Below, piece after piece: positions 4,856 to 44,289 of a stretch of DNA of 64,000 nt (position 1 is the stretch's first letter; the number at the start of each line of letters is the position of its first letter). The translations under genes were made by a program, and so were the position numbers. The notes below the pieces were generated by a model that worked only from the letters and a program-made list of their open reading frames with translations, ran no database searches and was not told the DNA's origin. The DNA is from Mytilus edulis (lineage: Eukaryota), in assembly GCF_963676685.1 (NCBI RefSeq), contig NC_092347.1, forward strand, positions 2,728,001 through 2,792,000, written 5' to 3'.

Positions 4856-6275
4856 CTTGGCTCACACCGATCAACAAGCTATAAAGGGCCCCCAAATTAC
4901 TAGTATAAAACCACTCAAACGGGAAAACCAACGGTCTTCTCTATATAAAATAAAAAAACGAGAAACGAGAAACACGTAAAAATTACATAAACAAATGACA
5001 ACTACTAAACATCAGATTCCTGACTCAGAACAGGTGCAGATTAAGAACACACAAGCAGGGGTACTGGCCTAGTGCTTGTATATGAATACAAGTACTACAT
5101 TTGTATTTGAGCCAAGGCTCTCTTTACAAAAAAGATGAAGAGCTATAATCAAAAAGGTCCAAAAAGTAAAGCTAAATCCGTGAAAGGAATCAGAGCTTTG
5201 CATGATTTGTATTAATATTCGTCATACATTTTTTTCAGAATGCATTTTATCACAGAGCCAAATTTAGTATTATTTTTTCTGATGTACCTCTTCATGGACA
5301 GTTGTTACGGATTGTATTCAATTAATTGTAAGTTTACTCAGATAGTTACCAGTTTAGTGACCCATGCATAGTTACTGTGATGCTTTATTTTTGGCTACAT
5401 ATTCACACAGGTATAATATTATTAATGTCGGTTAGGTAAAACTGAGTCTACATAAAATATTTTGATAAACATTACGAATGTAGTTATAATTTTCATCTTA
5501 ATGATCGGTGACAAATGACAGCAAACAGAGATTTTGTACATGTGTTAGATTAATTGATAAAGAAATGAAAACAAAAACGAACTCAAACATACATAGAGAT
5601 GAACTTTCTGATAACAACTACCATATTCCTGACTTGGTACAGGACATTTTAAGATGGTGGATTGAACCTGACCAAACCTCATGTTTACATGACAATTTTA
5701 AAACATATTCCTAATATTATGTGTTCCTAACTAGTACATATTCTTCTCCGCTTCTAGTAACCGTGGAATTTCCATAAGTCATTATTAATAACCTGCTTAT
5801 TCATATTCGGATATGTCACAATCGGAGAAAATTTCACCGGAGAATACCTGCAAAAATTTAGACATATCCATAGACATCTGCAATACAGATATTCCATAAC
5901 GTTCATCCAAATTAAGATGTTCAGAATCACAATACTATCACATAGTGGTTTATAAGCCAGTGACCCTGCTTGTGTGTTCTTGGTTTCTTGATATGTATCA
6001 TAACCTAACCAGGGTTAGGTACTACAAATGTAGTACTTGTATTCATATACAAGCACTAGGCCAGTACCCCTGCTTGTGTGTTCTTAATTTGCACCTGTCC
6101 TAAGTCAAGAATCTAATGAACAGTAGTTGTCATTTGTTTATGTAATTTATACGTGTTTCTCGTTTCTCGTTTTTTTTAATTTTATATAGATTAGACCGTT
6201 GGTTTTCCCTTTTGAATGGTTTTACACTAGTAATTTTGGGGCCCTTTATATCGTGTTGTTCGGTGTGAGCCAAGG
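4856..6275. repeat. About 250-bp inverted duplication (4856-5105 / 6023-6275) flanking the start-codon exon of paralog A
   Basis: 5031-5105 is the reverse complement of 6023-6097 with 1 mismatch, and homology continues through the adjacent repeat. The left copy is bracketed by a 26-bp direct repeat (4794-4819 / 5134-5159). Confidence 0.9.
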
Positions 6276-9200: not shown

Positions 9201-12200
9201 ATATCCGATATCATTTGATAAATGTTTATTTCATAACATTTAACCAACTCGTGATGGCGTCCATAAAATTTACGAAGGGATGATTTCAACTTCACCATTT
9301 GAAACTCATGGTTTAATAGCTTCCGTGTGAGCACCAACCCCCTATCAAGAAATTCATGGTAGGAAATGCAAGCATGGTAACATATCAAATGGGAGATATA
9401 TACCCGTATGCAAGTGCTGCTTGAATGTTGCTACTTTGAAATGGAAAGTTCACAATTGGAAAGCTGATATCATCTCTTTTGTCGTAAAGTTTTGTTTTAA
9501 ACCGACCCTCATTGTCAATTTCTAGATGTAAGTCAAGATATGAGGCCGACTTAACTGTATCTGTTGTATCCTTTATCTCTAGTTCGATGGGATATAAGCG
9601 TTCAGCATAATCACCAAATTATGAATTATTTAGTGAAAAAACATCGTCTATATAGCGGAAAGTAGAGTTATAGGATATTGCTAACTTCTTATCTTTATTT
9701 CTAAGAAGTTCCTGTATGAAGTCAGCCTCATAATGATAAAGAACCAAGTCGGCAAGAAGAGGGACACAATCGGTTCCCATTGGAATGCCGACAGTCTGTT
9801 CAAAAACACGTTCTCCGAACGAAACAGATATGATGTCAATCAAGAAACAAGCATTTTAATAATGTCAGTTTCGGTGATTTTTTTGTTTGATCCTTTATAA
9901 AGTAGAATTTATCCCTCCCTAGGACAAGATACTTGTATTTACGTTAGCTATTCTTTTTTATGAAACAAAGCAGTACCAGCTCTTTCCATTTGATTTGTTT
10001 TTATTGCGACTAATATTACATTACAATGTTGACTGTAGTACCCTAATTTTTTACGCTTTTTACCTATTACGTATGTTTGTTTTGCAAAAACACATTTATA
10101 TAACCAATATATATAATGGAATATAATGCGACTGGCATGCAATATATTGCTTTAGCAATTTCTAAAACCAGGTATTACCACCATATTCTACGTAATAAAA
10201 TGCCTGCAGCACATCAGGAACTGAAAGCAGGTTTCCATGCGTGACATTTTTCTGAGCTTTTGATTTTGACATTTTATAAAGCACTTTCAGTATTAAATTT
10301 CAGATAGAGCTCGTTATTTTATTCTTTTTTAAACCGGTAGTCGACCTGGTTTATCTGCTTTCAATTTCAGATAAAAAAATATAACACAACCACAAGCAAC
10401 AACATAGGTTATACAGTAGCTGGAGTTGTTGTCTTTATTGTTTGTGCATTTGGTATGTTCTGCTGTATAAAGTCGCGTCTCAGATCTAGAAGAGAAGTAG
10501 GCTTGGCATGTATTGGCGAGGCTGTATGTACTTGTTTCACTTGTGAATGTTTTGACTGTACAAATTGTCCATCGTGTGACTGTGATTGTGAAGATATATG
10601 TAAGCCATATGGGCTGTGTTATGCGGCCTTGGTGGGTTGTTGTACACCTTCAGTTTTAAATGTGAGAGGTGAGAGTTACCAAGATGATTCGTTGGAAACA
10701 ACAGGAATGAATCCAGTGTCTGAAGAGCTGGTACAGACTCGCACGTCGACTTTAATGCCAGAGCCTTCCGCACCCCCACCAGATTACCATACATTACAAG
10801 GTATCATTTATGTATATTTTACATTATTTTATACAACTATTGATACTTTCACAGATTAAAGCACACACTTATATATTTTTTGAATTCAACTTTATTGCAA
10901 ATAGGTCAATGGATAAACATTTCACATATAGCTCTGACATAATGCAGATGATTGTATTGCAAGAAAAATATTTGACAGTAGATTCGCAATGATGTCATCA
11001 GTTATAAAATGTTTTCCCGTTTTAATGATCGTTTTGTTCATTTCTATTTCTATTTCTAAATTTAGGAACAGACTTTTTAAGGTAAAGATTGCATGCAATG
11101 TAACCAAAGCCTTATGGAACTGACTTGATATCTAAATGTTCCAAGGCTGATCACTACTTTTTTAATACACAAAATATACTGCATTGATCATAACATTCTA
11201 TAGATCATATCCATGAACATTTCAAGAAATTTAACAAAGTAATATAAAGAGAGCCGTGGTATTGTGGGTAGTGCATCGGACTACTAACACAAAGGTTCCT
11301 GGTTCGATTCCCGTTTCGGATGAAAATTTCAGGAACTCAATTTTCGGCTCTCCCCTGACACCATCTGCGAGTATGGTCTTGGGGAAACGATGATAGTCCG
11401 TCGGAAGGGGACGATAAATGGCTGACCCGTGTTAAGAGAGCCATATCTCTTGCACGTTAAAGACACCCTTGTAGATTTCGAAAAAGAGTAGGCTAATGCC
11501 GCTACAAGGCAGTACTCTCACCCGCAAAGTGGAAAGGGATTAATATAAGTTGCAAAACTTGTTTCCCAATCCACTATAAATTAATAAGTTTAAACTAATA
11601 TATGTTCACATATTCAAGGCACAAATGAAGTCTCACTTGTCAAGAAAATTACATAACCTTTGCAAGGTGCAGAAATCTTCGAATATCTGATTTAAAATGA
11701 TAAATGATATAATGGTTAAAGTCAACCCATTGGAGTTATCTTCCTTTGTCTAAAATTGCTGTTAAATCAACTACAACCAATGCAATATTTGATTTTGCTT
11801 CCCACTGATAAATTGAAGCAATCTTTACCATTCAGTGCTTACAAGCACTTTGATAAATCAATGTCTATAGCTTCGAAATAACATTTACGTCGTCGGTTTT
11901 CTACGAAATATTTATTGATCTTTAAAAAAAATTAATCAAAAACCATGTATTACATCAATAAAACAACATAAAACACCAGCAAATAACACCATACCTCTCT
12001 ATAATCATAACCACTGTAAATGGTTCTTCAATATCTAACAATGATATCAGAAAGAATAGTGGCGAACATGTCAAAATAATTTACTTTTGGATGTAATGTG
12101 ACTTTGTGTTATTACTTTAAAGACAGAAAAATAGTAAAAACAATATCGAAAATGTGGTCATTTTTATAAATTTCCTGTTAACAAAACTTTCAGTTTTTCG

Positions 12201-20502: not shown

Positions 20503-23175
20503 TGCTAACTTTTCAATATCGTTTCAATAATATCGATTTTGTTCCCTTCATGGAATTATTAACACAAATCTTTATCACGTAATTTTTTTAACTCTTCCTG
20601 AGTTCACTTGTTATTTTTTTTCTAAGTAATCTTGTATCCGCAAATAAACAACATTTTGATTGTGAACAAGTTTCTATTTAAGGTGTTGTATTCGTGTCTT
20701 CCATTCTACTATTGTGGCTGTGCAATAATACAAATTAATCCCAGTTACAGTATGTTTAAATCACGTACTAAACTCTTATATACCGAGATTAGACGTACCA
20801 AAATGCTACATTATGTTTTATATTAATTTAAGGTTTAATCTAGGATTAACTTAGTGTATTATATGCACAAAACAACACATGGTAGAAATTTCAGCTGACC
20901 TGCTCAAATAAGTTCATTGAAATTGGATATTTGCCGATAAAAAATCTGTGCAGACAACTCTGAACAGAGCGTGCGGTCTCTTCACCAAAGTTGGACATAG
21001 AATTGAAAACGAGAAAATAAAAAACACAAACAGATTACATCTAAATTGTCTATCATGGTTAAATAAAGCTTGTTCATTTTTGCTTTCCTTTGATGTTTAT
21101 GTATCATTGTCAGATTCTTGTGTAAACTATGTAAGAGATTTTGAGAAAAAAAACTTAAAGTGGAACTTTATAACATCCAGGTTGATAAGAGTGAAATGTT
21201 ATGACATAACCATGAAATACACTCATTTTTGTTTTTAAGAAGCACGCTTTATTGATCCTACAAATTCGATGGTGTATGTGCCATGCATCAAATATTTGCC
21301 GCCTGACGTTCTGTAAAAAAACAACAACCATAAGTCGTTGTGTTCATTAAAATAATGTTTCAAATGCTTACTTAATTATCTATGAACATCACAGTCAAAC
21401 TTGTATATTTTAATAAACACCTATTCCATTCTACGTCTGTATTGTTCCACTGCATGGTGACAGTTTAAAGTGTTGTTACCTCGACATTTAGTAGTTAATA
21501 TACGTACCAGTTTTAAAGTACCTACTAAGTGTTTTAATAAATACTATAGATATCGGTATTTCATTTAAATATCTCATATCACTTGGGAATTTAATTTTTC
21601 TGATTTTTTTATTCATAAATTAAATATATGATATTTCCATAATATATGACTTTTTCAAGTCTTAAAATGGAAATAAAAATTATCTAACCGTAGAGTATCT
21701 AGCTGTCTCTGTATCCACAAGACAACGGTATGCTTTGAACATGGTTTTACATTGTGCAAGATCAATGTAAACTTTGAATATTTCATAAATATTTTGCACA
21801 GAAATTCATATCAGCTTTGACTGCATAAATGGAGGTTTCTTGCATTAAATAATAATGTGCTTTCTATTGTAAGTCTTACATGTCAGATGTATTTTTACAT
21901 GCATAAAATACGAATTTTCAATAAGCTATGAGAGATCCTTCACCGAAGACTGATCGACCAATTAATATTAATTTTTTTTATTCGAAACCGTATAGAATGG
22001 TCTCACTGACAATCATACAACATCTTCTTATCTTTATTTTTATCTAATATCTTCTCCGGGCCTAATGACTTAGCCTTTTTATCGAAACAATGTACGTTTA
22101 TAAATAACTAAGGAGTAGTACTTCATCGGAACAAAAAATAATATTACAGGATAGAACGATTGTCAATGGGCGTCTTTTGTTTAAAATGTCCAGTGGCAAA
22201 TATCACATGCATTTAAGTATGAAAACATGTTATGTGGTATTTATATAGACACCGCTTGTCAGTCTTGGCCTAAACATCGAGCTTCTTTATTTTTTTGTTC
22301 TTTAACATGCTTTAAAAACAGATTTTGTTCTCCGTATTAGATTTATAATAAGTCGATGTAATTTCTTTTCTAAGGAGTTAAAAGGCTGCTTAAAATTGTC
22401 ATGTTTTTTTCAAGTTCAATGGTCTAAACATTTCGTAGAACAGTGGCCTATATTCTGACCTTGGTTTATAAAGCTAAATAAATGAGTCACTGAATTGGAA
22501 ACGAATGAGTTTTACAGGATGCATAAAATAAAAGATTTGAGTTTTTCCTTTTTACATCGTTAACTTATAATTGTAAGATATATATTTTTTTTTCTCCGAA
22601 GGTGTGAATATCATTATATCTGATGTTACAAATATGTGAGCATTTGGTAGTGAAAATGTAAGATTTGCAAATATATATTTGCGGGATCTTATTTCAGGTT
22701 GAAAAACTGCGGTCGTAAGGAAAGTAATCATTTACACGCCAAGTTAAATGTCCGATGTTATTCTGATCCCGGCTTTGTGTATACAACAAATAATTATGAA
22801 ATAGGGTAAATATTAATGCCCACACAAAATCAATATTAAATGGACAGAATAAAATCAAAATGTAAAAACATGTATAAAAATGACAACGAAGTCGGATAAT
22901 ATACATAGACTAGTAAGTCCTTTTTTCAAATGATTTTCGAACAATTATATTCCACAATGTCACACATACAACATTTAACTGAATCAGATATAGATATTTG
23001 ATCGTCTGTTTTTAAAATTTCCATTTATATCTGTTTAATGGCTTGATATATTTATGTTATTGCTAATCATTTCTTTTAAAAATATAGCTATAAATCTTAC
23101 TGTCAAGGGGAGATAAACGATATTTTGTTTGTTACTTGTATTTTCTTTTATTAGGAGATTTTGTAGACTTTAAAT

Positions 23176-26100
23176 ATGTATAACAGCTATAAACTGAGAG
23201 CAGAATAAAAAAGGAAAAAACCAATTTTCCTCTTTTTTCACTCTTAATTCTGACAAGTGCAATTAGAGGCCAAATTCGGACCAGAACGTAATAAATTTAT
23301 TCTATAACCCATGTATTAGAGAAAAAATCATGAAAAACAAAGACAATTCTGTTATATTAGTATTTATTTGTTACATTTCAAAATAAATTTATACTGAAAT
23401 CTACACTTAGCTGTCCATTTTCAGTCAACTCTCTGTAAAGGATTCAACATAGAATAAATTTATTCTAAATGCATGGTGCTTTCGGTATATGATCATTTAT
23501 AAAATAAATTTATTTTATAGAGCCATAATATCTATTATTAGTTCGAGAAAATCATAGAATAAATTTATTATACATTCAATGTCATTTATGATTATAACAA
23601 TATTTAAAATAAATTTATTTTGAAAGTCCAATAATCTGTATGGTGAGGCTGAGACACACAATACATTTATTCTACATTCAATGCGATTTCGGATTATAAT
23701 AAAATATAAAATAAATTTATTTTGAAGTAAAGTTATCTGTATGGTGAGGCTGTGACACAGAATAAATTAATTCTATTTGAATGCGATTTCGGGTTATAAT
23801 AAAATATAAAATAAATTTATTTTGACGTAAAGTTATCTGTATGGTGAGGCTATGACACAGAATAAATTTATTCTATTTGAATGCGATTTCGGATTATAAT
23901 AAAATATCAAATAAATTTATTTTGAAGTAAAGTAATCTGTATGGTGAGGCTGTGACACAGAATAAATTAATTCTAGTTTCAATGCGATTTCGGATTATAA
24001 TAAAATATAAAATAAATTTATTTTGAGTTAAGTTATCTGTATGGTGAGGCTGAGACACAGAATAAATTTATTCTACATTCAATATGAATTTTGTTCATAT
24101 AAAAATAATCTTAAAAGTATTACATGATACAAAATTAAAATAATTTAAAAGAAAATTCCAACGGTCTTATTTATTACAGACAAACTGAGAGACAACTTGA
24201 AGCTTCGTTATAATGCATCTGGTACTAATCGTTTAGTAATCTGATCTTTTAGGGACATGCAGATCTGTAGCTGGAATTATTCATCTTCAAACTCTTCTGA
24301 CCTTTTCAAACAATCATCTTTGTAAATGTAATATTCCCAAATACATGTTTCCATTATTCCGTTCAACCAAAGCTATCTGAAAGATCAAATAAAAAAATGC
24401 AGTTCATACAAAAAAAAAGAAAAATGTGTCTATGGGCTACAAATGATCCTGCTCGTAAATGTGCACGTGTCAACTTCCACATTCAGATACATGTACAGGA
24501 TTCAAGTAGTGAAGACAGTTTTGTGATTTTAACATTCGGTTGAGGCAAACTTAAGTTAGAGAACAGAAACATCCAGCATTGTTTATGGTTATAAATGGGC
24601 ATAACCCAAGATGGTAAAAGTCTTGCAACATCTTACATTAACCTTGTCAAAAACGAATTGTAACTTGTAAAGTAAGCAAATGTTTCAGAGAGATGTACAA
24701 GGACTGAAGGAGCAGCCGGATCTGATCGCCGTATAGATAAGATGTGCAAATGATTGTACAACTGAACATCACATATCAGGCCCTCGCTCTAAAATTCATA
24801 ATATATTCCTTTTCATAGAGTAACCGATACATTGCACGCATTCTTAAAATAATGAATTTTAAATCACTAATAACAATTATATTTAAATTAACACTTTCAA
24901 AATCTTTAGCAATGAGATAAGAAAGAACACTTTTTATAAAACAACAATTATGAATCTTAATTTCAGCATTCTAAGATACTTCTTTTCTTTTTTTTTTTAC
25001 CTCTAAAGATTTTCCTCAAAATGTATCCTTCACTAATGTTCTCTGTGGTTGTAGTAATTTCTGCCATTTTGTCTGCCTTCTAAACTTTTGTGTTTCTTTA
25101 AAAAAAAAATCCTTTTGATAGAAGTGTCTGGTGACCTATAAAGAACAGCGTATTATATTTTGACTGAAATGGTCATGTTATCCATGAAGATGCAGACTTT
25201 TTGTCAATTATTCTGTGTGCCAAACAGATTGCATAAGAGTGTGAGTACAGTTCTTTAGGTACTTATGAAAATGTTCAAAACTATATTTTTTTTTACATAA
25301 TATAATCTCTTGCTCGTTTATTCGTTTTTCGCAATGGTGTGTTATTTTTTCATAGACTTATGAGTATAAATATGATCCTTTGGATTCAGTGGCGGACCCA
25401 GTTAGGGTTCTGTGCTTTGAACACCCTTTTTTTTTTACGATCATTGGTTTTAAATTGGAACAAATGTTTAGAACCCTCTTTTAAAAATGACTGGTCCCGC
25501 CCCTGGGTATCTTTCACTTTTTGCTAAAATAATAGGTACATTTTCCATCCTTCTATGAAACAATTTCATAGCTAGTGTGTCCTAACAGCTGTTCTAAGAC
25601 TAAGCGTAAAGAAAGTTAACTTTTTAATTTTTTAAATGTTTAAAAATTACTTCAACTTTCACCAGTAGGAAATAATAATGAGATTACCAATTAGAAACAT
25701 TATTAATATCATAATAATTAAACTTAAGATAATAAATAATATTTATCTAATAATTTTACGTTCAAACTTATGTTCGCATGTTTTCAGATACCATCTCCAA
25801 TATAAAAAAAATCACATCATGAAAAAATTAACTTGTTATGTGTTCCTCTTCTACTAGCTTCAAAATGTATCCAAAATCAAGAATGTGGAACATACTCTAT
25901 CTGACATAATCATTTAGTAACTGATGCAATTAGTGTCTCGAGCTCTTTTATTCCCGTCTTGAACATAAAAAACTAAATATAAAATAAACAACTCTGCTAA
26001 TGCTCAGGTTGGTTGTCATATCATGAAACATAGTTAATAATATAGAAACCAATGGGGATAACAAAGAACTTCTTTAGTCATACAAAACACAGTCAAAAAC

Positions 26101-29100
26101 CCAAACATACTATCCACACTGATCTGTGTCCACACTTGTAGTATATAAATTTATCTTTGTGATATAACAAATTGTCAGAGTAGTAAAGTCAAATTTAGTT
26201 ATAGCATTAAGCTTTGCTTCATGATACACCTCTTTCTTTAATGATATGATTATCGTTATCATAATCAGTTTTGGAGTTCCATAAATGTTTTATTCCAAAT
26301 TGTACTTGTTTATTATGGAGTGATCGATATTATTCTTATGCAGTGCTATCGTAAAAAAATATGCAAATTGATTCGCAGATGCGGATCGATCGAGGATTTG
26401 AAAAGGGACATAAGCAGAGACTTATTAAACGTCTAGTATGCATTAAGCATGTATGTCGGGTATCCACGAGGGGACCCCAGTATCCTTGACCCCCACCCCT
26501 CACCCCACCTCTAGTAAACTGAGCAAAACTAACCTCCAATTTCTTGAACTGTGATGAATGTTTCATAATCGAAACTGGAAAACTATCCCGTCTATGTTTA
26601 ACTTGTCTTTCCTCCTTTTGATGTCCACTGTCTGTCATCTTCGTTGCACGTACATAGAGAGAAATACCAAGTGATCATATTATACAAAATTACAGATCAG
26701 TGTCATATAAACTGGTCCGCCGTTCCATCTATACAATGTAGCTTCGCACCGTCAGTGTAGCGATAAGTGAACACAACAGGGGTCCAGTTTAAGTGTCCTG
26801 CGTCTTGTCATTAATTATCTTGTGTTTCCATTTGAAGACTTCTCGGCATGTGGTAACACTATGGGCCTACAATCAACGTACGCGTGCATTACATAAAATT
26901 GATAAGGCTTTTAAGCCGCGTTTGTTGTAATTAGTAATAATTATTTTACAACTTCTGATAGATATGCGGCACTTGTTTGCTAACATACATTAAACAAATC
27001 GAAGGTTGTAAATTATTTGAATCTGTGTCATTTCATAGAGGTTTTTAATGTATGGTCATTTTATATCTTTCAAATAAAATAATATGCTAAACAAAAATGG
27101 ACAACTACAAAATTATAATGGTCTGGATGGATGGTCCATCGATTTTGTATTCTTTTAATTTTTAAAACATTTTTTCTATTCTTTATAATTTTGCTCATTA
27201 TTCTCTATTTGATCATCCTTTTATTTTCTATTCTTTATATTTTTTTGTATATGCTATATGTTTTGTCCTTTATTCTGCGTTTCCCAGTCGCGTGATTTGA
27301 TATTCTGTCAACTCCAACAAGACCCTCAAGTATTATTACCGATAAAATAGGCGTTTGAGAATGTGTATCATTTTGTCTTATTCTTTCTTTTATTTGTTTT
27401 AAAAGATTGGAAAGTAGGTATATATATATGTATGGGTGTTGCTGAATTTATGGACACTTAATGGTGACTTGGGAATAGAATTGTCTTCATCCGCCAAAAT
27501 AGAAAAAAATGTAAAACCCGTATAAAAAGTTTACCGAACTTCATCCTGGTCTACCCTTAATTTATTACAGGTATTCCCCATGCATGGTAATACGTATGTA
27601 TTGTTTTAAAATAGCTTTTCGTTCCGTGCATGCATGCATGAACTATTTGACACTGCACGTTCTCAGTCTGCAACCACCAATCTGTCAATCAATCGATTTT
27701 ATAGAAAAGATGTATCATATCTTACATCAAAACAATGTATAACGCCACCCGTTCATCTTTTTCTACAAAATGATATATGTGCAGATCACACTGCTGACAT
27801 TACTAGACCACATATATGACACTTCGTCTATACCTGAGGATGTGGATGGGGGTTTACAGAATAGAGAATAATGAACAAAAAATAGAAATAATAGTATCGG
27901 AAGTATTGGAACAGAATATAAACAAACAGGAACATAAATTGTACGGCTTCTAATTATAAATGATTACAGTTCAAACACAGCTGCATCATACATTAAAGTT
28001 AACGGTCAGTCAGACAGTCTGCTAAAGTTCACGAAAACAATAAATCTACAAATACTTAACACTCTAGGCCAAGGCAAATTAAATACCGATCTTAGATAAG
28101 AAATAAATGTGCAAGTTTCACCCTATGACAGTTTTTAGATAAAAAAAAAAAGACGATTTTTAAGTTTGCTGAACACATGTTTAGGCTAAAATTACGTGCA
28201 TATTCAGGACTTGAACAAAATAACAATAAATCCAGTAGATATAGGTTCGTAATGGAATGTCTTCATTGACTTTGTCTTGTGTAAAAAGCTCTTTTGAAAT
28301 CCCCGCGGGTTTAAGCAACATTGAAGTAAGTGCTTTGGTACTTTCATAGTTTATATATTTTTTAAGTTAATTCGCCATTTATTATTTTATTATTTACATG
28401 TGAAACAATAACCCGGATAAATCATTCCAAAAACATGATAGTGCTTACATTTTATAAGAGGATAACGAAATTAGAGAATTATATTTATTTAGATTGATAT
28501 CCATGATGGAGCAAAGTTTCAACCACTTTTTTATGTCCCTTTTTACCATAAGATACTCGCGTCATTATTTATATAAAGAATGATGAGGATGACGATAATA
28601 ACGATGTATGATGTCCAGTGGTAACTATTACATACATACACCCAGAATGACAACATGCTTTATGTTATTAACACGTTTTGTACTAGACAAACTGAGTCAG
28701 ATGTTTTGACGCATTTTTCAGCAGATACAAATAACTTTGTAAGAAGACGTGCCAAGACGCATTATTCTAACTTCAATCGTACCAGTATTCAAATGCTTTC
28801 ATTACTTATAAACGAATGTTTTCTTAACCTTCATTATTTGTTTGATAAGAGCAATGTTACAGTAATATCATGGAAAAACCATTTTTACGGAAAGCTGGAA
28901 CACTGAGAAGCTAAGTCAACAGTGTAGTATTCCGGACGTCAACACCAAAAAACAGCATGCAAATATATATATGGGGGGTAAGTATACCATTATTTACACA
29001 TCAGACTGTACTAGTTATATCATAACTTTGAATACACCAAACTAAGTACTTCATATCTGAGTAACAGGCAATGTACGTCCTCAATTTTATAGAACTAATT

Positions 29101-32100
29101 CATAACTTTTTGTTTCATTTGTATTCATCTGTCAAATGTGTGTGTTCTGCAAGGTTCAGCAGTCCTTACCCTTTCATTTGATATATGTATCTTTATTACT
29201 TACCAAAAATGATTCTGCATATAATATAGTTTGATTTAATCACGTAAGAACTACTAAAATTTTTAAATACGTACTTCTTTCCTTTTTGATCGCACCCGTA
29301 ATGGTTGGTGTAACATCTTACGAAGTCTATTCATTTTTTTTGGCAAACTATTTCGCTCTGGCTGTTGCTAGTGGTCGTCTTACACGTGCAGTGCTGTGAG
29401 ATACTTTTCGTTCCACGTTGAAGGTTTAATGTGACTTACAGCGCTGTTCCTTTGCTTAATTTTTTAATGTGTTTTTTTAATGTGGTTATATTCATTTTCT
29501 GTCACGGATTGATACCCAATATTCTTTTTTGTTTTTCTATGAAAAAAATGTTCCTTTAGAAAACATATTGGTATATTCCAAACTTCGATTTTTTTTTAAT
29601 AACGTAAATGATTTTTAATTTTAGCAAGGAGGTTATTGTGAGATATTCTAACCTAACTAAACGAAAAAGAGAATTGTAATATAAAATCTTACGATTCTAA
29701 AGTTTCTTCGAACAAGATTTGTTATCATATGATATGCTAATTACCCATATCATATTTTAATGACCACATACTGTGCCCATCGTGATCATATAAACCCTAA
29801 TAAATTATAAACATTCGAATGTAAAATTTCGCACGATAGATAATGACAAACAAACGACGGAAATTACATAATAAATCCACAGCGTGTATCTTAATATATT
29901 TGTCAGTACATGGATAACCCGAATAATCCAGTCGTTATATTACGATCACTTCGATCACTCCATTAACCATTTCCTCGAGAAAGTAGTGGATAGGGGCGCT
30001 GAATTATTCGAGTTAGCACATGGAGGAAAGATATTCAAAGATTAGGAGCGACGATTCAATATCCATTTGTGTATTGTATTTGTCGTGGTTGAAACGGCAC
30101 CAGGAACATATCAGGATAGACAACAAAAGTCTGTAAGTATCTATTTTATGTATTTATAAATATTAACATAGATCCTATAAGCCTGTCATGCCTTCTGTTG
30201 ACAAATTTTCTTAACTATGCACTTTTTTAGTAGACCACCGATGTCCTTTTCGAACTAAACGAAACTCTTTGAAAAGACACACCTCAGTCGAATCTTTCTT
30301 CTCAAATGAATGCCTGAATGGTCATCAAATTTATACTTGTTATGGGCAAAAAATGTATTAATTCTGACTGCAAGGAATTTTAAATTGTAAATAATATACA
30401 TTTTATCTCGAGGGAAATGTATACACACTTAGACAACAGTGAATTTTTCATAAATAATATATAATGGTAAAAGTGTAGCATACACATGATATATATCATG
30501 TGTATATCATGTGTATTAACTATTAAACTCTGGAAGAAATATAGTCAAGCATGAATACAAATTAATGGGTCCTATTTGGAAAACAATAATTTTTCTCAGA
30601 AAGGTATCTCTTTCTTCAGAGGTTTATATGAAACTTTGATGTCTGTTGTGCAGTGATGGTTTTTTTCTTTCTCCGACGCCTGTATGCGAGACATAGTAGG
30701 TATTGCAACCCGTCTGACAGTTCTCAATTGACTGCGACCTCATTTTTATGGTTCATTGGACAATTTTTAGTTGTGTGGTTGGGTCAATTTTTCGGGCATT
30801 ATAAGCAATAGGTCAATAATATGTAGTGTATGGAACAACCATGACAACTGTGGTGTCATGTCTATCTGTCGGGGTTAACATGACCTTAACCTAATTGTTT
30901 GATGATAAGATGTTGTATTAAGATCTGATTCTCAGGTACTATTAGCAACACCAGAACACACCCACAAAATCGCGGTCATATACAGCTTGTGAACTGGGAT
31001 GATTTTTTTGTATTAAAAAGATATTATGTATGGAGAATTTCATAAAAAGGTATCAAAAGCCCTCTCCCTTTTTTCAAAGTCTGATATTTGTTTCCTTTCT
31101 GTTAAATTCAATAGTTTTTGTGTCTCTGGTCTCAGACCACATGCAATTATTCTTCTCCTTTGCTACAATGCATCTTTTGGTAAACTTTGCACCGCTCCAA
31201 ACATGAAATAAATGTAACTGCTTATATTTAGACCATATTAGTCTAATAAAATATGCTTCTATGACAATCCATCAGTGCTTTTTCTTTTGAGGGCATTATT
31301 AACATGCCAATGGTAGGATATGAATCTTGTATATATGACTGACCGACTAAGGCTAATTTGAGGGGTGGTCGGAGGGGTCCTGATCCCGAAATCCCGGGCT
31401 TAAAAACATGAAATCCCGAGATGCAGAATTTAAAGAAGTTCATATCCCGAAATCGAAAAATATATTCCCGGATCCCGCAAGGGTCAATCCCCAAATCCCG
31501 AGGTCCCGAAAAAGTCCTGATTCCCTCTTATCCCTACCCTACTTTCTTTTTTGCCAACTCACTACTTTCAATTTCAACAATAAATTTTATGCCCCTTTTT
31601 TTGGCATTGTGTTTTCCAGTCTGCGAATCTGTGCGTTCGTTCGTTTGTTCGTCCTTCCGTCTGTCCCGCTGCAGGTTAAGGTTTTTGATAAGTAAGAAAA
31701 AGGCGAGACATTTGCACTCATATTTTGGTAATAAAATGTGTAAAGTGTTGACAAAAGTACATGTACCTAAATTTCAATATATTTTTGTATCAGAGTGCCG
31801 AAGGCGCATCTTTAACATTTTGAGAGGAAAATGGATATTTTGTTGAAGGGGGGAATGTGTTGGGTACATTACTTATACTTTTACCTGAGGAAGCTGCTGT
31901 TCTTTTTGAAACATGTCTTACTTGTTTTCTGGTATGTTGAATGCGGTAGGTAAAAGTATTGTCAACACCAGTCCTGTGTTTTGTTTAAAACTTAATGAAA
32001 CCTGTTTTTAATTGTAATTTGTGTCTTCAGTTCGCTGTCTCCTAGGCATGAAACATTCATCTGTTTTAAGACTCTATGATTGATTGATTGATTGATCATG

Positions 32101-35100
32101 ACTGGCTGAATGTGCAATGGCAAATATTACATGCATATTCAGGAAGTTGGGAACGATTCATGCCAATCCTGATAAAAAATAAAGAAATATGCCTGAAGAA
32201 AAACAATAACAGAGTAAGTGTTCCTGCATTTTAACTTCAAATATTTCTTGTAGAGTGAGAAAAATGTTATGAAACACCAGCAAAAAAGATTAGATTGTTA
32301 TTCAGTCCTGACTTATACAGTGTTTCTGAAGATGGAGATTAGGTATGCAATAATGAGTTTTTAATTTGATAGAGTGTTGACTTTTAAATTGTAAAAGTTT
32401 AATGAGTTACTGTACGTTAATCCCTTTATTGTATAAAAATTCAACAATTGCTGTTCAAGTGCATAGCATAGCCATCTTTATCTTGCTGTACATGTATCCA
32501 GAGGCAATATATATATATATAAGAAGATGTGGTATGGGTGCCAATGAGACAACTCTCCATCCAAGTCACAATTTATTAAAGTAAATCATCATAGGTCAAA
32601 GTACGGACTTCAACACGGAGCAAGACTGTTATTAATGACAATTAAGAGAGTGAATAATATTATATAAACAAAATAGACATCATAATTAAAAGAAAGACAG
32701 ACAGTTTCTTCATCAAATATAATAAATTTTGGTATGATAACTAAAAATGTTTGAAATTGTTTTGAATTTGTCGTTACTTCTTTCAGATCAGGCCTATCCA
32801 GAAGCAAGAAAAAGAACAATTCATAGCACGTACATCTACAGAGAGAGACATGTTTTAAAAAACAGATTTATTTTCAATTTTAGAAAAATCTGTTGAACTT
32901 TTACTATTTCTTATCTGTTTATTTACATTTATATGTTGATATTTTGTTTTTTAAAATTGCTGCACAGTAATTGTATTCAGTCCCATATAACAAAATCAGC
33001 TAAAGAAATTGATATTTTCATATTTCAAGGGAGTGTCCTTTTGCATTGTTGATAGCAGATATAAGTATTGTCTTAAGTTGGGTTTAAAAACAGTCAGATC
33101 GCAACTTCAAATAATATACATTTTTATGAATGTTATATGTCATTAAATAGACATGAAAGATGGAAAATTATATAGGAACTCATTTTTTATGACCTAAATG
33201 TATTGTCAAGGTAAATTTCTTATTTGAACATATTATCAAAAACACTGCTGGTTTAAAATAAAATTATTCTATGTAGCCTAATGTAATCATACAGATCAGT
33301 ATATTTTTTCCTAAACAAATTTTACATATTTTTATAACCAGAATAAATTTATTCTGTTTCTCAACCTTAACATAATTACTGTACTATCAAAATACATTTA
33401 TTTTATATATCATAATACTTTTAATCCACATTGAATGTAGAATAAATTTATTCTGTGTCGCCTCCTTAATATGATAACTGTACTTTCAGAATAAATTTAT
33501 TTTATATATTATTATACAAGACAAAAATCACATTGAACATAGAATAAATTTATTCTGTGTCTCAACCTCACCATACAGATTACATTACTTTCAAAATAAA
33601 TTTATTTTATATATTATTATAATCATAAATGACATTAAATGTGAAATAAATTTATTCTGTATCACAGCCTCGCCATACAGATTACTGGACTTTCAAAATA
33701 AATTTATTTTAAATATTGTTATAATCATAAATGACATTAAATGTAGAATAAATTTATTCTATGATTTTCTCTAACTGATAATAATATCAAGGCTCTTTAT
33801 AATAAATTTATTTTATAAATGATTAAATACAGAAAGCACCATGCATTTAGAATAAATTTATTCTAAGTTGCATCATTTACGGAGAGTTAAATGAAAATGG
33901 ACAGTAAAGTGTAGAATTCAGTATAAATTTATTTTGAAATGTATCAAATAAATACTAATATAACAGAATTGTCTTTGTTTTTCATGATTTTTACTCAAAT
34001 ACATTGGTTATAGAATAAATTTATTACGTTCTGGTCCTATTTTTGCCTCTAATTGCACTTGTCAGAAATTAGAGTGAAAAAAGAGGAAAATTGTTTTTTT
34101 CCTTTTTTATTCTGCTCTCTGTTTATAGCAGGTTGTGTGCTGCTGCAATTTTCTCAGTATTTACCAGTCCGGTTCTCTCAAATACAGTTGATCGTAAGTA
34201 AAATATACTTTACAAAAAGACACATGCATAACAACTTTGAGCTCTCTGTATATATATAATGTTTTAAAATAATTACCAGAATGAACAACGTTGAAAACGT
34301 AAGATTATCAACCAGTGGACAAACTTGCTGGACATTGTATTTGTTAGAAAAAGAACTCGTTTCGACTACGCAAATTATCAAAAAGTATGTAACTGTTTTG
34401 TAGAGTTAACGTATAATTACGAAAAAGCAATATTTTGCATGCAACAAATCGAAATCTTCAATAAATTACATCGCAAATGACAGTTTACTTGTAAAAAGCG
34501 GCAAAATTCGACAAAAAACATTCTTGCAAGACAATTACCAGAAACCGTGACATTTTTAGTTGTGGTTTGAGTGCTGCCAAAATTCGGTTTCAATATGTCA
34601 TATTTACATGTAAGTACTTTGTGAGCATAATATATGAAAATGAAAATTTATATAAACTTATATTTTAAAGACCTATACATTTTGATAACTTACCATTTTC
34701 CTAAATCTGACCATGATCAAGACTATTTATTTTTGTCAAAAAATACCTTTGGTAGTTACATCAACGCATATTCAGTAATGTTGTTATACTTTATATCATT
34801 CATGCGAATTTTCGCGGATTTTATTCTTTTTCGAAGAGAACAAACACCCCCGCCAAAACTCGGGGAGTTATCAGGTACTCCGGAGGATAAACAGATCCTA
34901 CTCCTCATATGATAACCATCGTGTTGCTGTAGGGCACATGTGAGGATCAAAATGCATTAAAAATAAATATATTCGGTAGCTAATGAGAGTAAATATAATC
35001 TCAGGATTAGATGTAGCATGTCATTTACTAAATACTTGAGTTTATTTGGTCCTCCATATATGTGCGTTTCTGAAAGTTCAATAACTGTCTGAAATGTTCG

Positions 35101-38100
35101 AAACTATATAGAGATATCGGAAAAAATTCAACTATTCTAAAAAACCAAACCTTTCACAATTAAGGAATCAATTTTAGACAAAAAAGACACCAAAATCCAA
35201 ACTGTTTGCTAATCACACATATGATCATATTTATAATAAAACAATTTTTTAACGGATAAAGACGAAAAAATTAAACATCCTTCTATATTCATTAATTTAA
35301 TATACTCATTACCGCTTTTTCAGTACTGTTTAATTCCTACAACTGTGATGAGATGCCGAGGACGGTTTCTCTAGATAAAACCTACACTTTATCATGGTAT
35401 GGTAAGACAAGCCCACATCTGTGTACGTTTAATTTTACTGGTGGTGGTAATGGAGAGTCCTATATAAACATGCAACTTTGTTTTGAGTCTGAGGAGTATG
35501 ACCTACCATCGTATGATGTAAAGCTTATAGTGTCAGACGAATCTCAGAAATGGGTAGGTTTAACTTTTGGTAAATAGAACATGTAGATGTCGGATACTAA
35601 GTATTGGTTTCGGACACATCAAATATTGACATTGATGTACATAGCTTTGATCGTTGTCAATTGAACTTTGATAGATAGTTGTCTCATAGGCACTCCATGA
35701 TATATCCCTACCTATGCATAGGCGATTTGCCAGCTTACATTGTGACAAGACACTCTTAGTTTTAATGTGCGAATTTTATGCGTTTGTTTTTTTCTACATT
35801 TGCTAGAGGTTTAAGGGGAGGGTTGAGATCTCAAAAAACATGTTTAACCCCGTCGCAATGTTTGCGCCTGTCGCAAGCCAGGAGCCTCTTGCCTATGTTA
35901 GTTTTGTATGATTTTTAATCTTAGTTTCTTGTTTATAATTCGGAGTTTAGTATGACGTCCATTATCAATGAACTAGTATACATATTTGTTTAGGGGCCAG
36001 CTTAAGGACGCCTCCGGGGTGCGGGAGTTTCTCTCGGTGCATTGAAGACCTATTGGTGGCCTTCGGCTGTTTTCTGCTCTATGGTCGGGTTGTTTTCTGT
36101 TTGACACATTCCCCATTTCCATTCTCAATTTTATTTACACATTGTAATAGTCAACTGCCTAAAGATGTTTATTTGCTAGACAAAACAGTGTTTGTTTAAA
36201 TGGAAAGAAAATGATTAAGTGTACCTGATCAATACATTCACCTTATTTGATGTACATTGCTGTTGTATATAGTCAGTGCACCAATTACTTCTCCTATATA
36301 TATACAGGTTTATGATGGCTCACAGCAACAGATTGAAAGACAATGTATAGAGAGAGCCTATGAGATAATGTTCAAGATGCAACTAACAAATTATTATACA
36401 GAGTCGTCATGGAAACTAAAACTGAAAATAACAAGTGAAAAACTTACAAATGTAGACGACGGTTGGTATACCATATACAATTAAGAGGGTCAATCAAATG
36501 TACTTGTTTAGTTGATGCTGTTCAGTATCACTTTAAGCGACTTTAGTAATAGAATGATGGCTAGTTTTTATTGGCGGAAAATGCTAAAGTCGGGGTCCTT
36601 GGAAAGAACCGGCGACAGTTGGCAGGAAAACTTTCTTAACTTGTTAATAACTAGTATACTTTTATATCTTCGAAAATCTTACATTTATTTTACACTGTTA
36701 AAACTTACCTGGTAAAGTTGGGTTACAATGTGACAAACCGTTGATACATTGTATAGTTTTTTTATGCCCCACCTACGATAGTAGAGGGGCATTATGTTTT
36801 CTGGTCTGTGCCTCCGTCCGTCTGTCTGTGTGTCTGTTCGTCCGTCTGTGCGTCCGTTCGCTTCAGGTTAAAGTTTTTGGTCAAGGTAGTTTTTGGTGAA
36901 GTTGAAGTCCAATCAACTTGAAACTTAGTACACATATTCCACATGATATGATCTTTCTAATTTTAATGCCAAATTATAGTTTTGACCACAATTTCATGGT
37001 CCACTGAACATAGAAAATGATAGTGCGAAGTTCAGGTTAAAGTTTTTGGTCAAGGTAGTTTTTGATGAAGTTAAAGTTACATCAACTTGAAACTTAGTAC
37101 ACATGTTCCCTATGATATGATCTTTCTAATCTTAATTCCAAATTAAAGTTTGACCCCAATTTCACGGTCCACTGAACATAGAAAATGATAGTGCGAGTGG
37201 GGGCAACCGTGTACTATGGACACATTCTTGTTTAAAACAGATAAAATGACTGCAATATGAAAATACGAGGATATAGTATGGTTGCCGAAGGGACAACTTT
37301 GCACCAAAGAAATTTGACATAGAAGTCAGCATCCGTAGGTCACTGTATGGCTTTAACATGCAAAAAGCTAAATCCAAACCGTATACCAAGTTTTTAAAAG
37401 TTCCGACATGACTAGTAAAAATACAATCCAAACCAAAAAAGAACAAAAACAAACACGATATACAGCAATAGACGACAACCACTGAATAACAGGTGTCTGA
37501 CTGGAACAGTCATATACACAATATGGTGGGGTTAAGCATGTTTGCGGGTGCAAAGCTATCCCCTAACATGGAACCGTGGTGTTACATCACCACAAAGAAA
37601 CACACTATAAAACCAGATGATTAGGACTTGACTCTACACAAGGCACACTGAAAAAAACACCAAAAGAGCTCAGACATAAAGTATCGATAAGACAATACTC
37701 GCGGTAACTAAAAAAAGAAGATGTGGTAAAAAAAACTATGATTGCTACTGAGACAACTCTTATGAGATATCTAGATATTGGAATAAATAGCAAATGGCTT
37801 GCCATAGATTTCCCTTGATAAGGCGGGTTCCTGCGGCCCTTACCTTGAGAGCAGATTCTAAAAGATGCATCACGGTGGCCCCATACTCCATAGGTAGTGT
37901 ACTTGCTGCATTATTTGGTGTAATGACCTTTGACTGTGCATTAAGCACATGTGAATGTACAAGCCTCACAGTATCTAGACCAAAGCTTGCTATCATTCCT
38001 CTGTCCATGACCACCACAACCCCAAAATTTGGCTCCAGCTGCTTGGGTCGTTTCTGAGTATTGCATGTGGCACTCATGGCACTTACTCATATTGCACTCC

Positions 38101-42783: not shown

Positions 42784-43307
42784 TTATATATGACTCATAA
42801 CATGTTGAAAGCATCTGCGAAGCTCGTATAGATCAGCTTCATTAAGATGCAACCCTCCGTCCTTAAAGGCAAAAAGAGACCTAATAGGACGTCCTCTTAC
42901 AAGAAACCTTTTATATGATTTTATAAAAATAATGTTATATTTAGAACATACAGAAAGTAATTGCCTATTAATATTAGCACATTTAAAACCAGTTAAATCA
43001 AAATCTACAGGTCTTGGTAAAATAGAAGATATATAAAGCTTGACATGCGGAGACAAAGATTTAAATTTTACAAATAACTCTCTAAAATCAGCAATGATAC
43101 GATCTACAGAAAAGTCTCTTACATCGTTAGTTCCAACATGAATAAGACAGTAAGAATAGTTACTTAAGTTTATTTCACCTTGATCCAGTTTCTTGTTAAT
43201 AGTGGAAATACGAGCACCACTGTAAGCTTGAAGGTCCATGTTAGAAATGCCAGATAAATGTTTACAGATTGAATCGGATAACACCAGTACATGTTTGTTG
43301 GTTATGT
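42784..43307 (-). CDS. SGNH/GDSL hydrolase (esterase) of the YR element
   Basis: Block I LSDSI, block II SGARI, block III HVGTND, block V DGGLHLN. Intact ORF from the acceptor ttttttcag|AC at 43307. Confidence 0.9.
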
Positions 43308-43318
43308 CTGAAAAAATA

Positions 43319-44289
43319 TTATAAAAGTTTGGCCATTGACTCTGCAACAGATATTTTCTCCTGCATAGTAAAATTCAAATATAGCTTATAGGCATCACTT
43401 GCCCAGTCACCGTGCAGCTGTATCAGTTCACTAGGGACTCTAGCCTGAAAGGCAAATGACGCACCTCCCCGTCTAAAAGAATGTGTAGAGTAAAGGCGAG
43501 TATCTCGTCCAGTCAATGAAATGATACGCTTAAGTTTAGATTGAAACTGTTTGTAAGTTACTGTTTTAAGACTAGCATTTCTCTTGATAACAAAAGCAGG
43601 AGATTCTTCAGGAGCAGGAATCATGCGGCACATTCTATTGTATGCAGTAACGGGACATAAAATAGAATCATCTATTTTGACCAAAGGTATTTTTAAAATT
43701 CGTTCACCACATTGTATAGTTTTAGTCCATTCAAACACCACAATAGCTACTCTTTCATGCATAAAAACTTTGCCTCTAGTAAGTTGCCTTTTATAATCAA
43801 AAGAATCTACAGAATCTGGCACTAAATTAGACTTACGAGACATAAGAAAAAAGGCAAATAAAAATAAACACCAATACACAATATCTGTACAATTATCAAG
43901 GTCTAAAAATTTAAGCATCTCTTTTAGCAAATCGGGAGTAATAGGCCTAGCTTGTCTAGGACAGTGTTGTTTGACTCTAGAAATTCCCGCCATTAACAAC
44001 TTAAATTCAAAATTATCTAAAGGGGGAAATGGAAGATCTAAATAAAAATGCATAATTTTAACACCATTGATATAATTCCTGATAGAATCAGTCGATTTGA
44101 ATGATCGACTTAAAAATTGCGCATAACAGTTAATCGTTTTAAAAGTGACAGGAATAGGAGCAACATCAAAATAAAAACAAAAGAGCAAAAAGGCTCTCCA
44201 TTGTGAAACTAAATTTTTCTTAGTTCCTACTGCAAACGCAGACTTAGTAGACTTTTTAACATCTTTCTCTAACTGTTTAAACTGAACAT
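43319..44289 (-). CDS. Tyrosine recombinase (phage-integrase family) of a DIRS/Ngaro-like element
   Basis: Uninterrupted ORF from the acceptor ttttcag|AT at 44289, with N-terminal core-binding region (SAFAVGTKKNLVSQW...CYAQFL...IRNYINGV) and catalytic R (MSRKSNL), K (WTKT), HSFRRGG, HGDW and Y (SDAYKLY). Confidence 0.93.

What the first reader, a model, noticed from the sequence alone, without database searches (positions are those of the whole stretch)
23167..34193. 10.9-kb foldback element inserted into a signal peptide, with a precisely reconstructable empty site
Seen: left junction ttgtag|ACTTTAAAT ATG TAT AA[CAG]CTATAAAC..., right junction ...GTTTATAG[CAG]G TTG TGT GCT GCT GCA ATT TTC. 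Removing the element and one CAG gives MYNRLCAAAIFSVFTSPVLSNTVD, a plausible signal peptide that ends in phase 1 and follows an acceptor just before the ATG, as in paralog A. The TIRs are about 0.8-0.9 kb of 100-bp tandem units carrying AATAAATTTATT palindromes about every 50 bp. Known: 3-bp TSDs fit PIF/Harbinger (some use CWG) or CACTA, and internally repetitive TIRs typify Foldback/Galileo elements. Inference: an unclassified large cargo-carrying DNA transposon with no recognisable transposase.
Basis: partly seen in the sequence, partly recalled or inferred. Interest (0 to 1): 0.85.

Follow-up and report, generated by a model that had tools for sequence, protein, structure and literature searches.

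The report
Large gene-less transposon splitting mussel gene
A 10.9-kb jumping gene with long repeat-filled inverted ends but no gene of its own sits in the first coding exon of a mussel membrane-protein gene; it is real and recently mobile, but its ends and target duplication (4 bp, not 3 bp) were misread, so the proposed family assignment falls.

Summary
The element is real, but its borders were misplaced.

It belongs to a family with 58 termini in this 1.37-Gb mussel genome, about 24 pairs of 7.5-17 kb. All copies start with AACTGAGAGCAG. Ten of 11 paired copies have perfect 4-bp duplications.

Insertion sites favour a palindromic target, YTAY-N4-RTAR. The window's site, CAGC-TATA-GCAG, is nearly palindromic itself, which made the inverted repeat seem 6-9 bp longer.

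Orthologous proteins of Mytilus coruscus and M. californianus begin MY(T/N)SY. They align without a gap only to the 4-bp reconstruction.

The arms are about 0.9 kb each.

I found no coding capacity:
- 117 ORFs gave no Pfam hit.
- The subfamily consensus has no ORF above chance length.
- Substitutions show no codon-position bias.
- There are no Rfam or tRNA hits.

Two subfamilies, of 13.5 kb and 10.9 kb, differ by about 9%. Each has copies about 1-2% diverged, so both moved recently.

The best reading is a large non-autonomous cut-and-paste transposon mobilised in trans. Its features resemble Sola, but the superfamily is unproven.

The parts
23167..23187 (+). 5' part of host exon 1, before the duplicated TATA. 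The acceptor AG is at 23165-23166 and the ATG at 23176. It encodes M-Y-N-S.
   Evidence: Sequence read. The reading frame joins to 34128 onward.
23188..23191 (.). Left copy of the 4-bp target site duplication, TATA.
   Evidence: family homology begins at 23192. Ten of 11 paired copies have perfect 4-bp direct repeats at this register.
23192..34123 (.). The transposon proper, 10,932 bp, a member of the 10.9-kb subfamily. Its termini are AACTGAGAGCAG and, on the right (reverse complement), AACAGAGAGCAG.
   Evidence: Near-identical copies lie at C4:1046448-1057444 (98-99.5%), C14:30146676-30157611 (98%) and C7:59778251-59789886 (99-100%).
23192..24094 (+). Left inverted arm. The outer roughly 365 bp are unique, followed by the tandem array.
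23556..24083 (+). Left array of 100-bp units, 5.2 copies at 90% identity. Each unit carries two 16-bp palindromes built on AATAAATTTATT.
24095..33256 (.). Internal region. It is specific to the family and collinear with the other copies, and I detected no coding or RNA gene in it.
33257..34123 (-). Right inverted arm. It includes the 102-bp tandem array at 33340-33760.
34124..34127 (.). Right copy of the 4-bp target site duplication, TATA.
   Evidence: In one search, contigs of runs X1 and X15 start or diverge exactly at 34124.
34128..34193 (+). 3' part of host exon 1, holding the hydrophobic core and cleavage region of the signal peptide. It ends in phase 1, with the GTAAGT donor at 34194.
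35324..35556 (+). Host exon 2. It is 95% identical to residues 29-105 of the 306-aa Mytilus coruscus protein CAC5408041.1.
5240..5327 (+). Exon 1 of the tandem paralog: 29 codons, phase 1, with an acceptor CAG one base before the ATG.
   Evidence: The paralog's exon 2 lies at about 6692-6898.

Best explanation
Window 23192-34123 is one copy of a low-copy family (about 30 copies) of large, gene-less terminal-inverted-repeat DNA transposons in a Mytilus genome.

Shown:
- The termini are fixed at AACTGAGAGCAG.
- Insertion duplicates 4 bp of the target.
- Insertion sites favour a 12-bp palindromic pattern, YTAY-N4-RTAR.
- Each roughly 0.9-kb arm carries about 15 copies of a 12-16-bp palindrome at about 50-bp spacing.
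- No protein or known RNA gene is detectable inside.
- Two subfamilies, 13.5 kb and 10.9 kb, each have copies only about 1-2% diverged.

Inferred:
- The element moves by cut-and-paste, using a DDE/DDD-type transposase supplied in trans by an autonomous partner I did not identify.
- A symmetric transposase multimer binds the arm palindromes and makes 4-bp staggered cuts in the target.
- Among known superfamilies the features fit Sola best: 4-bp duplication, arms up to 1.1 kb, elements over 15 kb, and presence in bivalves.

Effect of this copy: it landed in codon 6 of the first coding exon of a mussel-specific single-pass membrane protein of about 306 aa. The start codon is now 10.9 kb from the rest of the gene. 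The upstream reading frame stops 5 codons into the arm, so this allele is most likely null.
For: Borders and duplication:
- 38 termini share AACTGAGAGCAG with unrelated flanks.
- 10 of 11 pairs have perfect 4-bp direct repeats. The chance probability is about 1e-21.

Copy number and age:
- 58 termini genome-wide (29 forward, 29 reverse; the control pattern gave 0).
- Together, this gives about 24 pairs, 7.5-17 kb apart.
- copies on other chromosomes are 98-100% identical to the window copy over the full length.
- 13.5-kb subfamily copies are 1.3-2% from their consensus, and the window copy is 8.7% from it.

Target preference:
- T at position -7 in 27 of 38 termini (p=3.5e-6).
- A at -6 in 25 of 38 (p=4.8e-5).
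- A pyrimidine at -8 and at -5 in 31 of 38 each.

No coding capacity:
- 117 ORFs of 36 aa or more gave no Pfam hit.
- 10 ORFs from other copies also gave no credible hit (best: MscL, E=0.069, below its cut-off).
- the longest ORF in the consensus is 114 aa, against a shuffle mean maximum of 104.
- substitutions between the subfamilies fall 172/196/170 on codon positions 1/2/3 (p=0.31).
- no Rfam or tRNA hit.

Empty site:
- the 4-bp reconstruction aligns without a gap to the M. coruscus ortholog and shares MYNSY with the M. californianus ortholog.
- a contig of run X1 matches from 34124 rightwards, with 141 unlike letters before it. A contig of run X15 starts exactly at 34124.

Literature:
- Sola: 4-bp duplications, arms of 11-1124 bp, some elements over 15 kb (PMC10741241; PMC3627910).
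- Among molluscs, Sola appears restricted to bivalves (PMC10294476).
Against: - No transposase was found, here or elsewhere, that can be tied to these ends, so the mechanism and the Sola-like label are inference.
- Sola, Academ, Kolobok and Zator transposases have no Pfam model (PMC5751038). The Pfam blank alone therefore does not exclude them. The case against coding rests on ORF lengths and codon-position counts.
- ORFs of 40-60 aa are modestly more frequent than in dinucleotide shuffles (117 vs 91±7 at ≥40 aa). A gene of many very short exons is not strictly excluded.
- I saw no short, MITE-like deletion derivatives. That is odd for an element whose interior is dispensable.
- The letters of the 141-base loose end in run X1 were not shown. 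The empty allele in DNA is therefore inferred, not read.
Confidence: 0.8

Rival explanations
1. One reading: the element ends at CTATAAAC...GTTTATAG, makes a 3-bp CAG (CWG) duplication, and is therefore PIF/Harbinger- or CACTA-like.
For: In this one copy the inverted repeat does extend to 23186 and 34129, and CAG flanks it on both sides.
Against: - In 37 other termini, homology stops at AACTGAGAG, and the preceding bases are unrelated.
- Ten of 11 pairs have 4-bp duplications at that register.
- Orthologs keep the S-Y codons that this model deletes. It needs a 3- or 5-residue gap.
- Contigs break at 34124, not at 34129.
- The apparent extension is explained by the near-palindromic target CAGC-TATA-GCAG.
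Confidence: 0.02
2. A non-autonomous element of a superfamily other than Sola: CMC/Chapaev-like, Academ, or a superfamily not yet described.
For: - The terminus AACTG differs by one base from CACTG.
- Many subterminal repeats and a large size are typical of CACTA-type elements.
- The CMCT clade makes 2-5-bp duplications (PMC12730594).
- Academ is abundant in bivalves (PMC10294476). From my own knowledge it makes 3-4-bp duplications; one source says 3 bp (PMC5199201).
- A 12-bp palindromic target with TA at ±6/7 is not a feature I can attribute to any superfamily.
Against: - The termini are AA...TT in all 58 copies, not CA...TG.
- No hit to CMC transposase Pfam families in 117 ORFs.
- From my own knowledge, Academ arms are short.
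- None of this is decisive without the transposase.
Confidence: 0.35
3. The element is autonomous. Its interior encodes a transposase split into many short exons, of a superfamily that has no Pfam model.
For: - Earlier notes of this scan report multi-exon transposases in this genome (unchecked).
- There is a modest excess of 40-60-aa ORFs over shuffles.
- The collinear interior is retained across about 9% divergence, and there are no short derivatives.
Against: - There is no third-position excess among 538 substitutions in ORFs of 50 aa or more between the subfamilies.
- Conservation along the element is even, 86-96%, without exon-like islands.
- The longest consensus ORF is 114 aa, and ORFs of 80 aa or more are fewer than in shuffles.
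- The best-conserved ORFs translate to low-complexity, hydrophobic strings.
Confidence: 0.06
4. Not a transposon: a local inverted duplication or an assembly artefact.
For: None beyond the inverted repeat itself.
Against: About 30 dispersed copies on 14 chromosomes have identical ends and 4-bp duplications. Contigs from independent public runs cover the arm and the flank.
Confidence: 0.01

Closest known systems
Sola superfamily (Sola1/2/3) non-autonomous elements
   Same: 4-bp target duplications, highly variable terminal sequences, inverted arms reported up to 1124 bp, and elements that can exceed 15 kb (PMC10741241; PMC3627910). Among molluscs they appear restricted to bivalves (PMC10294476).
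   Different: No Sola DDD transposase is linked to these ends. The only Sola-like transposase noted earlier in this genome reportedly has TGT...ACA ends and a TA target (scan note s1-834842, unchecked). Reported Sola2 duplications are AT-rich (AWWT), whereas here they include ACTG, GTAC and CTCT. The flanking YTAY/RTAR preference is not something I can attribute to Sola.
CACTA/En-Spm and the wider CMC(T) clade
   Same: Large elements with large non-autonomous derivatives, many short subterminal repeats in both arms, and a terminus one base away from CACTG. The clade makes duplications of 2-5 bp (PMC12730594).
   Different: The termini are AA...TT, not CA...TG. Classical CACTA makes 3-bp duplications. 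No CMC transposase domain is present.
Foldback elements and Galileo (Drosophila)
   Same: Long inverted arms built partly of tandem repeats, and many copies without a transposase.
   Different: From my own knowledge, their duplications are 9 bp (FB) and 7 bp (Galileo, P superfamily), against 4 bp here. The arms here make up about 16% of the element rather than most of it.
MITEs and other non-autonomous TIR elements
   Same: No coding capacity, defined ends and duplication, and presumed mobilisation in trans.
   Different: Size: 11-13.5 kb, against under 0.8 kb for MITEs. Copy number is low (about 30), and I saw no short derivatives.

Membership tests
Sola superfamily | 4-bp target site duplication | tested here: met
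   Ten of 11 paired copies have perfect 4-bp direct repeats, TATA in the window.
Sola superfamily | Terminal inverted repeats within the reported range (11-1124 bp) | tested here: met
   The arms are about 0.87-0.90 kb. The range is taken from PMC10741241.
Sola superfamily | Encodes, or is mobilised by, a Sola DDD transposase | not testable with these tools
   Pfam has no Sola model (PMC5751038). No autonomous partner was found.
PIF/Harbinger | 3-bp duplication (TWA or CWG) | tested here: not met
   The duplication is 4 bp with no fixed sequence.
PIF/Harbinger | DDE_Tnp_4 / Plant_tran transposase, or remnants of it | tested here: not met
   No Pfam hit in 117 ORFs or in 10 ORFs of other copies.
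CACTA / CMC | Termini CACTA/CACTG (CA...TG) | tested here: not met
   All 58 termini read AAC(T/A)GAGAG.
CACTA / CMC | 2-5-bp duplication (3 bp for CACTA proper) | tested here: inconclusive
   4 bp lies within the clade's range (PMC12730594) but is not the CACTA value.
Foldback / Galileo | Duplication of 9 bp (FB) or 7 bp (Galileo) | tested here: not met
   The duplication is 4 bp. The family values come from my own knowledge.
Foldback / Galileo | Arms made of tandem repeats that form most of the element | tested here: not met
   Tandem arrays are present, but the two arms total about 1.77 kb of 10.9 kb.
Ginger | TG...CA termini and a Gypsy-like integrase (rve) | tested here: not met
   The termini are AA...TT, and there is no rve hit. 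The criteria are from PMC10741241.
piggyBac / Kolobok | TTAA target | tested here: not met
   Only 1 of 11 duplications is TTAA.
Non-autonomous TIR DNA transposon (generic) | Inverted ends, a constant-length duplication, multiple dispersed copies and no transposase gene | tested here: met

The most novel reading that the evidence does not exclude
The family may be the non-autonomous partner of a cut-and-paste lineage not yet described. Its marks are AACTG ends, a 4-bp duplication and a 12-bp palindromic target, YTAY-N4-RTAR. Its 9-12 kb non-coding interior may be required in cis, or carry a non-protein function. That would explain why two subfamilies kept it collinear through about 9% divergence and why no short derivatives exist.
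Probability: 0.15. Interest if true: 0.55.

Novelty: new member of a known kind. Interest (0 to 1): 0.33.

Why it matters
For annotation, it corrects the borders, the duplication and the empty site of a gene-disrupting insertion. It also defines a previously unclassified mussel transposon family: its ends, its 4-bp duplication, its target motif, two subfamilies and about 30 copies.

For transposon biology, elements of 11-13.5 kb that have no gene yet moved recently are unusual. Their arm palindromes and palindromic target give concrete handles for finding the transposase that moves them.

For mussel genetics, it is a candidate null allele of a Mytilus-specific membrane protein. It adds one more case of transposon-driven presence/absence variation. 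None of this is a surprise at the level of principle.

Tried and rejected
- Nested LINE: a 1303-aa ORF in copy C6:65160742 is a nested LINE with RT, endonuclease and PHD domains. It is not the family's gene.
- Terminal hairpin: the fold of the first 109 bases is not better than shuffles (z = -1.7).
- Related family through the terminal 14-mer: AACTGAGAGGAGAA has 26 unpaired hits.
- Exact 14-mer hits outside the family are 12 scattered, unpaired sites.
- Empty allele inside the assembly: exon 1 is unique in the genome, so no second haplotype is present.
- The papers by Yuan & Wessler (2011) and Bao et al. (2009) are not held. Superfamily traits are therefore cited from secondary sources or marked as my own knowledge.
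- Host-gene exons have no Pfam family.
- Earlier scan notes gave no element with these ends.
Full report
**1. What is in the sequence.**

The window is G000:C4:2728001-2792000 of a 1.37-Gb genome with 14 chromosome-sized contigs. It is AT-rich, about 32% G+C. Orthologs and earlier scan notes place it in Mytilus.

An inverted-repeat pair encloses about 10.9 kb. The arms 23186-23531 and 33784-34129 are 92% complementary, and further arm pairs run out to about 24094 and 33257. Tandem Repeats Finder gives a 100-bp array with 5.2 copies at 23556-24083 and a 102-bp array with 4.2 copies at 33340-33760.

AATAAATTTATT, allowing one mismatch, occurs 31 times in the window. Fifteen are in the left arm, 14 in the right arm and two elsewhere, against 3.4 expected. 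Within the units the motif sits in two alternating 16-bp perfect palindromes.

**2. The borders and the duplication are different.**

The outer arm has many near-identical copies in the genome. In 38 distinct termini, homology always starts at AACTGAGAGCAG, and the bases before it are unrelated.

I fetched eleven complete copies. Ten have a perfect 4-bp direct repeat directly outside AACTG...CAGTT: CTAA, CTAT, CTTT, ACTG, CTCT, CTGT, GTAC, TGAT, TTAA and, in the window, TATA. The eleventh is off by one base. The chance of 10 or more out of 11 is about 1e-21.

The element is therefore 23192-34123 (10,932 bp), with TATA at 23188-23191 and 34124-34127.

**3.

Pooling the 38 flanks shows a target preference just outside the duplication:
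- T at -7 in 27 of 38 (p=3.5e-6).
- A at -6 in 25 of 38 (p=4.8e-5).
- A pyrimidine at -8 and at -5 in 31 of 38 each.

Both ends show this, so the target is a 12-bp palindrome, YTAY-N4-RTAR. The window's site is CAGC-TATA-GCAG. It lacks the central TA pair but is itself almost palindromic. The inverted repeat therefore seems to run 6-9 bp into host DNA, and a CAG appears on each side.

**4. Independent check of the empty site.**

Exon 1 is unique in the assembly, so no empty allele is present there.

A whole-library protein search with exon 2 (window:35326-35556) found a 306-aa Mytilus coruscus protein, CAC5408041.1, at 95% identity. The match starts at its residue 29. Its 90% cluster also holds M. 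californianus XP_052100549.1.

Removing 23192-34123 and one TATA gives 27 codons plus one base. With the split codon, that places exon 2 at residue 29, exactly as in the ortholog. The N-terminus then aligns without a gap to M. coruscus, and its first five residues, MYNSY, are identical to M. californianus.

Contigs of public runs agree with this:
- In run X1, a 427-base contig matches 34124-34409, and its first 141 bases are unlike the arm.
- In run X15, which has zero mismatches and may be the assembly's own sample, a contig starts exactly at 34124.

A break at 34124 is what a filled/empty branch predicts under the 4-bp model. The loose-end letters were not printed, so the empty allele in DNA is inferred rather than read.

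**5. The family.**

The 23-base terminus, allowing one mismatch, occurs 58 times (29 forward, 29 reverse), and the control pattern occurs 0 times. With this gives about 24 pairs, 7.5-17 kb apart, on all large contigs, plus about 10 unpaired ends.

There are two subfamilies:
- The window's 10.9-kb type, whose right terminus reads AACAGAGAG. It has copies at C4:1046448-1057444 (98% over 9.2 kb; 99.5% over the first 1.7 kb), C14:30146676-30157611 (98%) and C7:59778251-59789886 (99-100%). A more diverged copy with insertions lies at C9:66946947-66962989 (94%).
- A 13.5-kb type, whose copies are 1.3-2% from their majority consensus. A few reach 3.4-6%, probably through misaligned or nested insertions.

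The two types are collinear and about 9% apart. Both were therefore mobile recently. The two arms of a single copy differ by about 8% even in copies whose arms are identical to those of other copies. Arm divergence is thus a family trait, not a measure of age.

**6. No gene inside.**

- All 117 stop-to-stop ORFs of 36 aa or more in the window's interior gave no Pfam hit better than chance.
- Ten ORFs picked from other copies also gave no credible hit.
- The only long ORF, 1303 aa in copy C6:65160742, is a nested LINE.
- This element is a cut-and-paste transposon without viral genes, so I built a majority consensus of the 13.5-kb subfamily in a script, only to look for ORFs. Its longest ORF is 114 aa, against a mean maximum of 104 in shuffles.
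- ORFs of 80 aa or more are not enriched. ORFs of 40-60 aa are modestly enriched.
- The 538 substitutions between the subfamilies in ORFs of 50 aa or more fall 172/196/170 on codon positions 1/2/3 (p=0.31).
- Conservation along the element is even, without exon-like islands.
- There are no Rfam families and no tRNAs.
- Only about 100 bp (32510-32615) is a common repeat. The rest is specific to the family, and every genome match to it lies inside family copies.

So "cargo" in the sense of captured genes is not supported. Sola, Academ, Kolobok and Zator transposases have no Pfam model (PMC5751038). A cryptic gene of many short exons therefore remains a small residual possibility.

**7. Mechanism.**

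Shown: fixed ends, a constant 4-bp duplication, a symmetric target preference, arrays of palindromes in both arms, no gene, and recent copies.

Inferred: the element moves by cut-and-paste, using a DDE/DDD transposase supplied in trans. That transposase probably binds the arm palindromes as a symmetric multimer and cuts the target with a 4-bp stagger.

**8. Comparison with known kinds.**

- PIF/Harbinger (3 bp), classical CACTA (3 bp, CA...TG ends), Foldback (9 bp), Galileo (7 bp), Ginger (TG...CA ends, rve integrase) and piggyBac/Kolobok (TTAA target) each fail a defining feature tested here.
- Sola fits on the 4-bp duplication, arm length, element size and presence in bivalves (PMC10741241, PMC3627910, PMC10294476). 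Its defining transposase could not be tested.
- The wider CMC(T) clade makes 2-5-bp duplications (PMC12730594), and the terminus is one base from CACTG, so it remains a rival.
- I file the element as an unclassified non-autonomous TIR family, Sola-like in its features.

**9. Effect on the host gene.**

The host protein has a signal peptide, an extracellular region with no Pfam family, one transmembrane helix and a PPPSY tail. A tandem paralog lies at 5240 to about 10859. Relatives number only 16 in 1.8 billion cluster representatives; the two named ones are from Mytilus.

The insertion lies in codon 6. Reading on from the ATG, the frame stops 5 codons into the arm. This allele is probably null, but I did not test expression.

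**10. Limits.**

- The single reads call returned contigs only.
- I joined the two exon-1 halves only inside scripts and did not send the joined sequence to any search tool.

Noticed in passing
L036:3579-7487 (-), i.e. inside family copy G000:C6:65160742-65176842: An uninterrupted 1303-aa ORF with PHD finger, endonuclease/exonuclease/phosphatase and reverse-transcriptase domains. It is a young LINE nested in one copy of the family.
   Followed up: partly
window 5240-10859 (+): A tandem paralog of the disrupted gene with the same exon plan. Its exon 1 is at 5240-5327, its exon 2 at about 6692-6898 (about 45% aa identity), and it has a cysteine-rich tail with a PPPDY motif at 10455-10859. The protein family seems specific to mussels. 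One library hit (P0008, 1513 aa) matches the exon-2 domain in 22 separate stretches.
   Followed up: partly
window 34100-34131: The right end of the arm plus the duplicated TATA and the flank forms a pyrimidine tract ending in TATAG and CAG, which looks like a splice acceptor. An earlier scan note (s1-837006) proposes rescue of the gene through it. I checked the sequence only and have no RNA evidence.
   Followed up: no
window 42784-44188 (-): Adjacent intact ORFs of 289 aa and 187 aa. Other notes of this scan describe them as a tyrosine recombinase and an SGNH-type hydrolase. I did not run them against Pfam.
   Followed up: no
window 45437-47285 (-): A run of ORFs of 198-203 aa that look like fragments of a reverse-transcriptase-bearing retroelement.
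   Followed up: no
window 36759-37233 and 57459-58237: Arrays of a roughly 168-bp tandem repeat, 80-90% alike between the two places. A related piece lies inside the element at about 31604-31663.
   Followed up: no
window 2059-2560 (+): A 71-bp tandem repeat that stays open in one frame, giving a series of overlapping ORFs with the same 59-aa peptide.
   Followed up: no
window 47609-48085 (+): An ORF starting MPEGPEL, which from my own knowledge is the N-terminus typical of Fpg/Nei-type DNA glycosylases. It is probably an exon of a NEIL-like host gene.
   Followed up: no
G000, 26 sites (e.g. C1:66685530, C1:66855541, C1:66895195): The 14-mer AACTGAGAGGAGAA, one base from the family terminus, occurs 26 times against 4 for the control, and the sites are unpaired. 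I could not inspect them and do not know whether they are related.
   Followed up: partly
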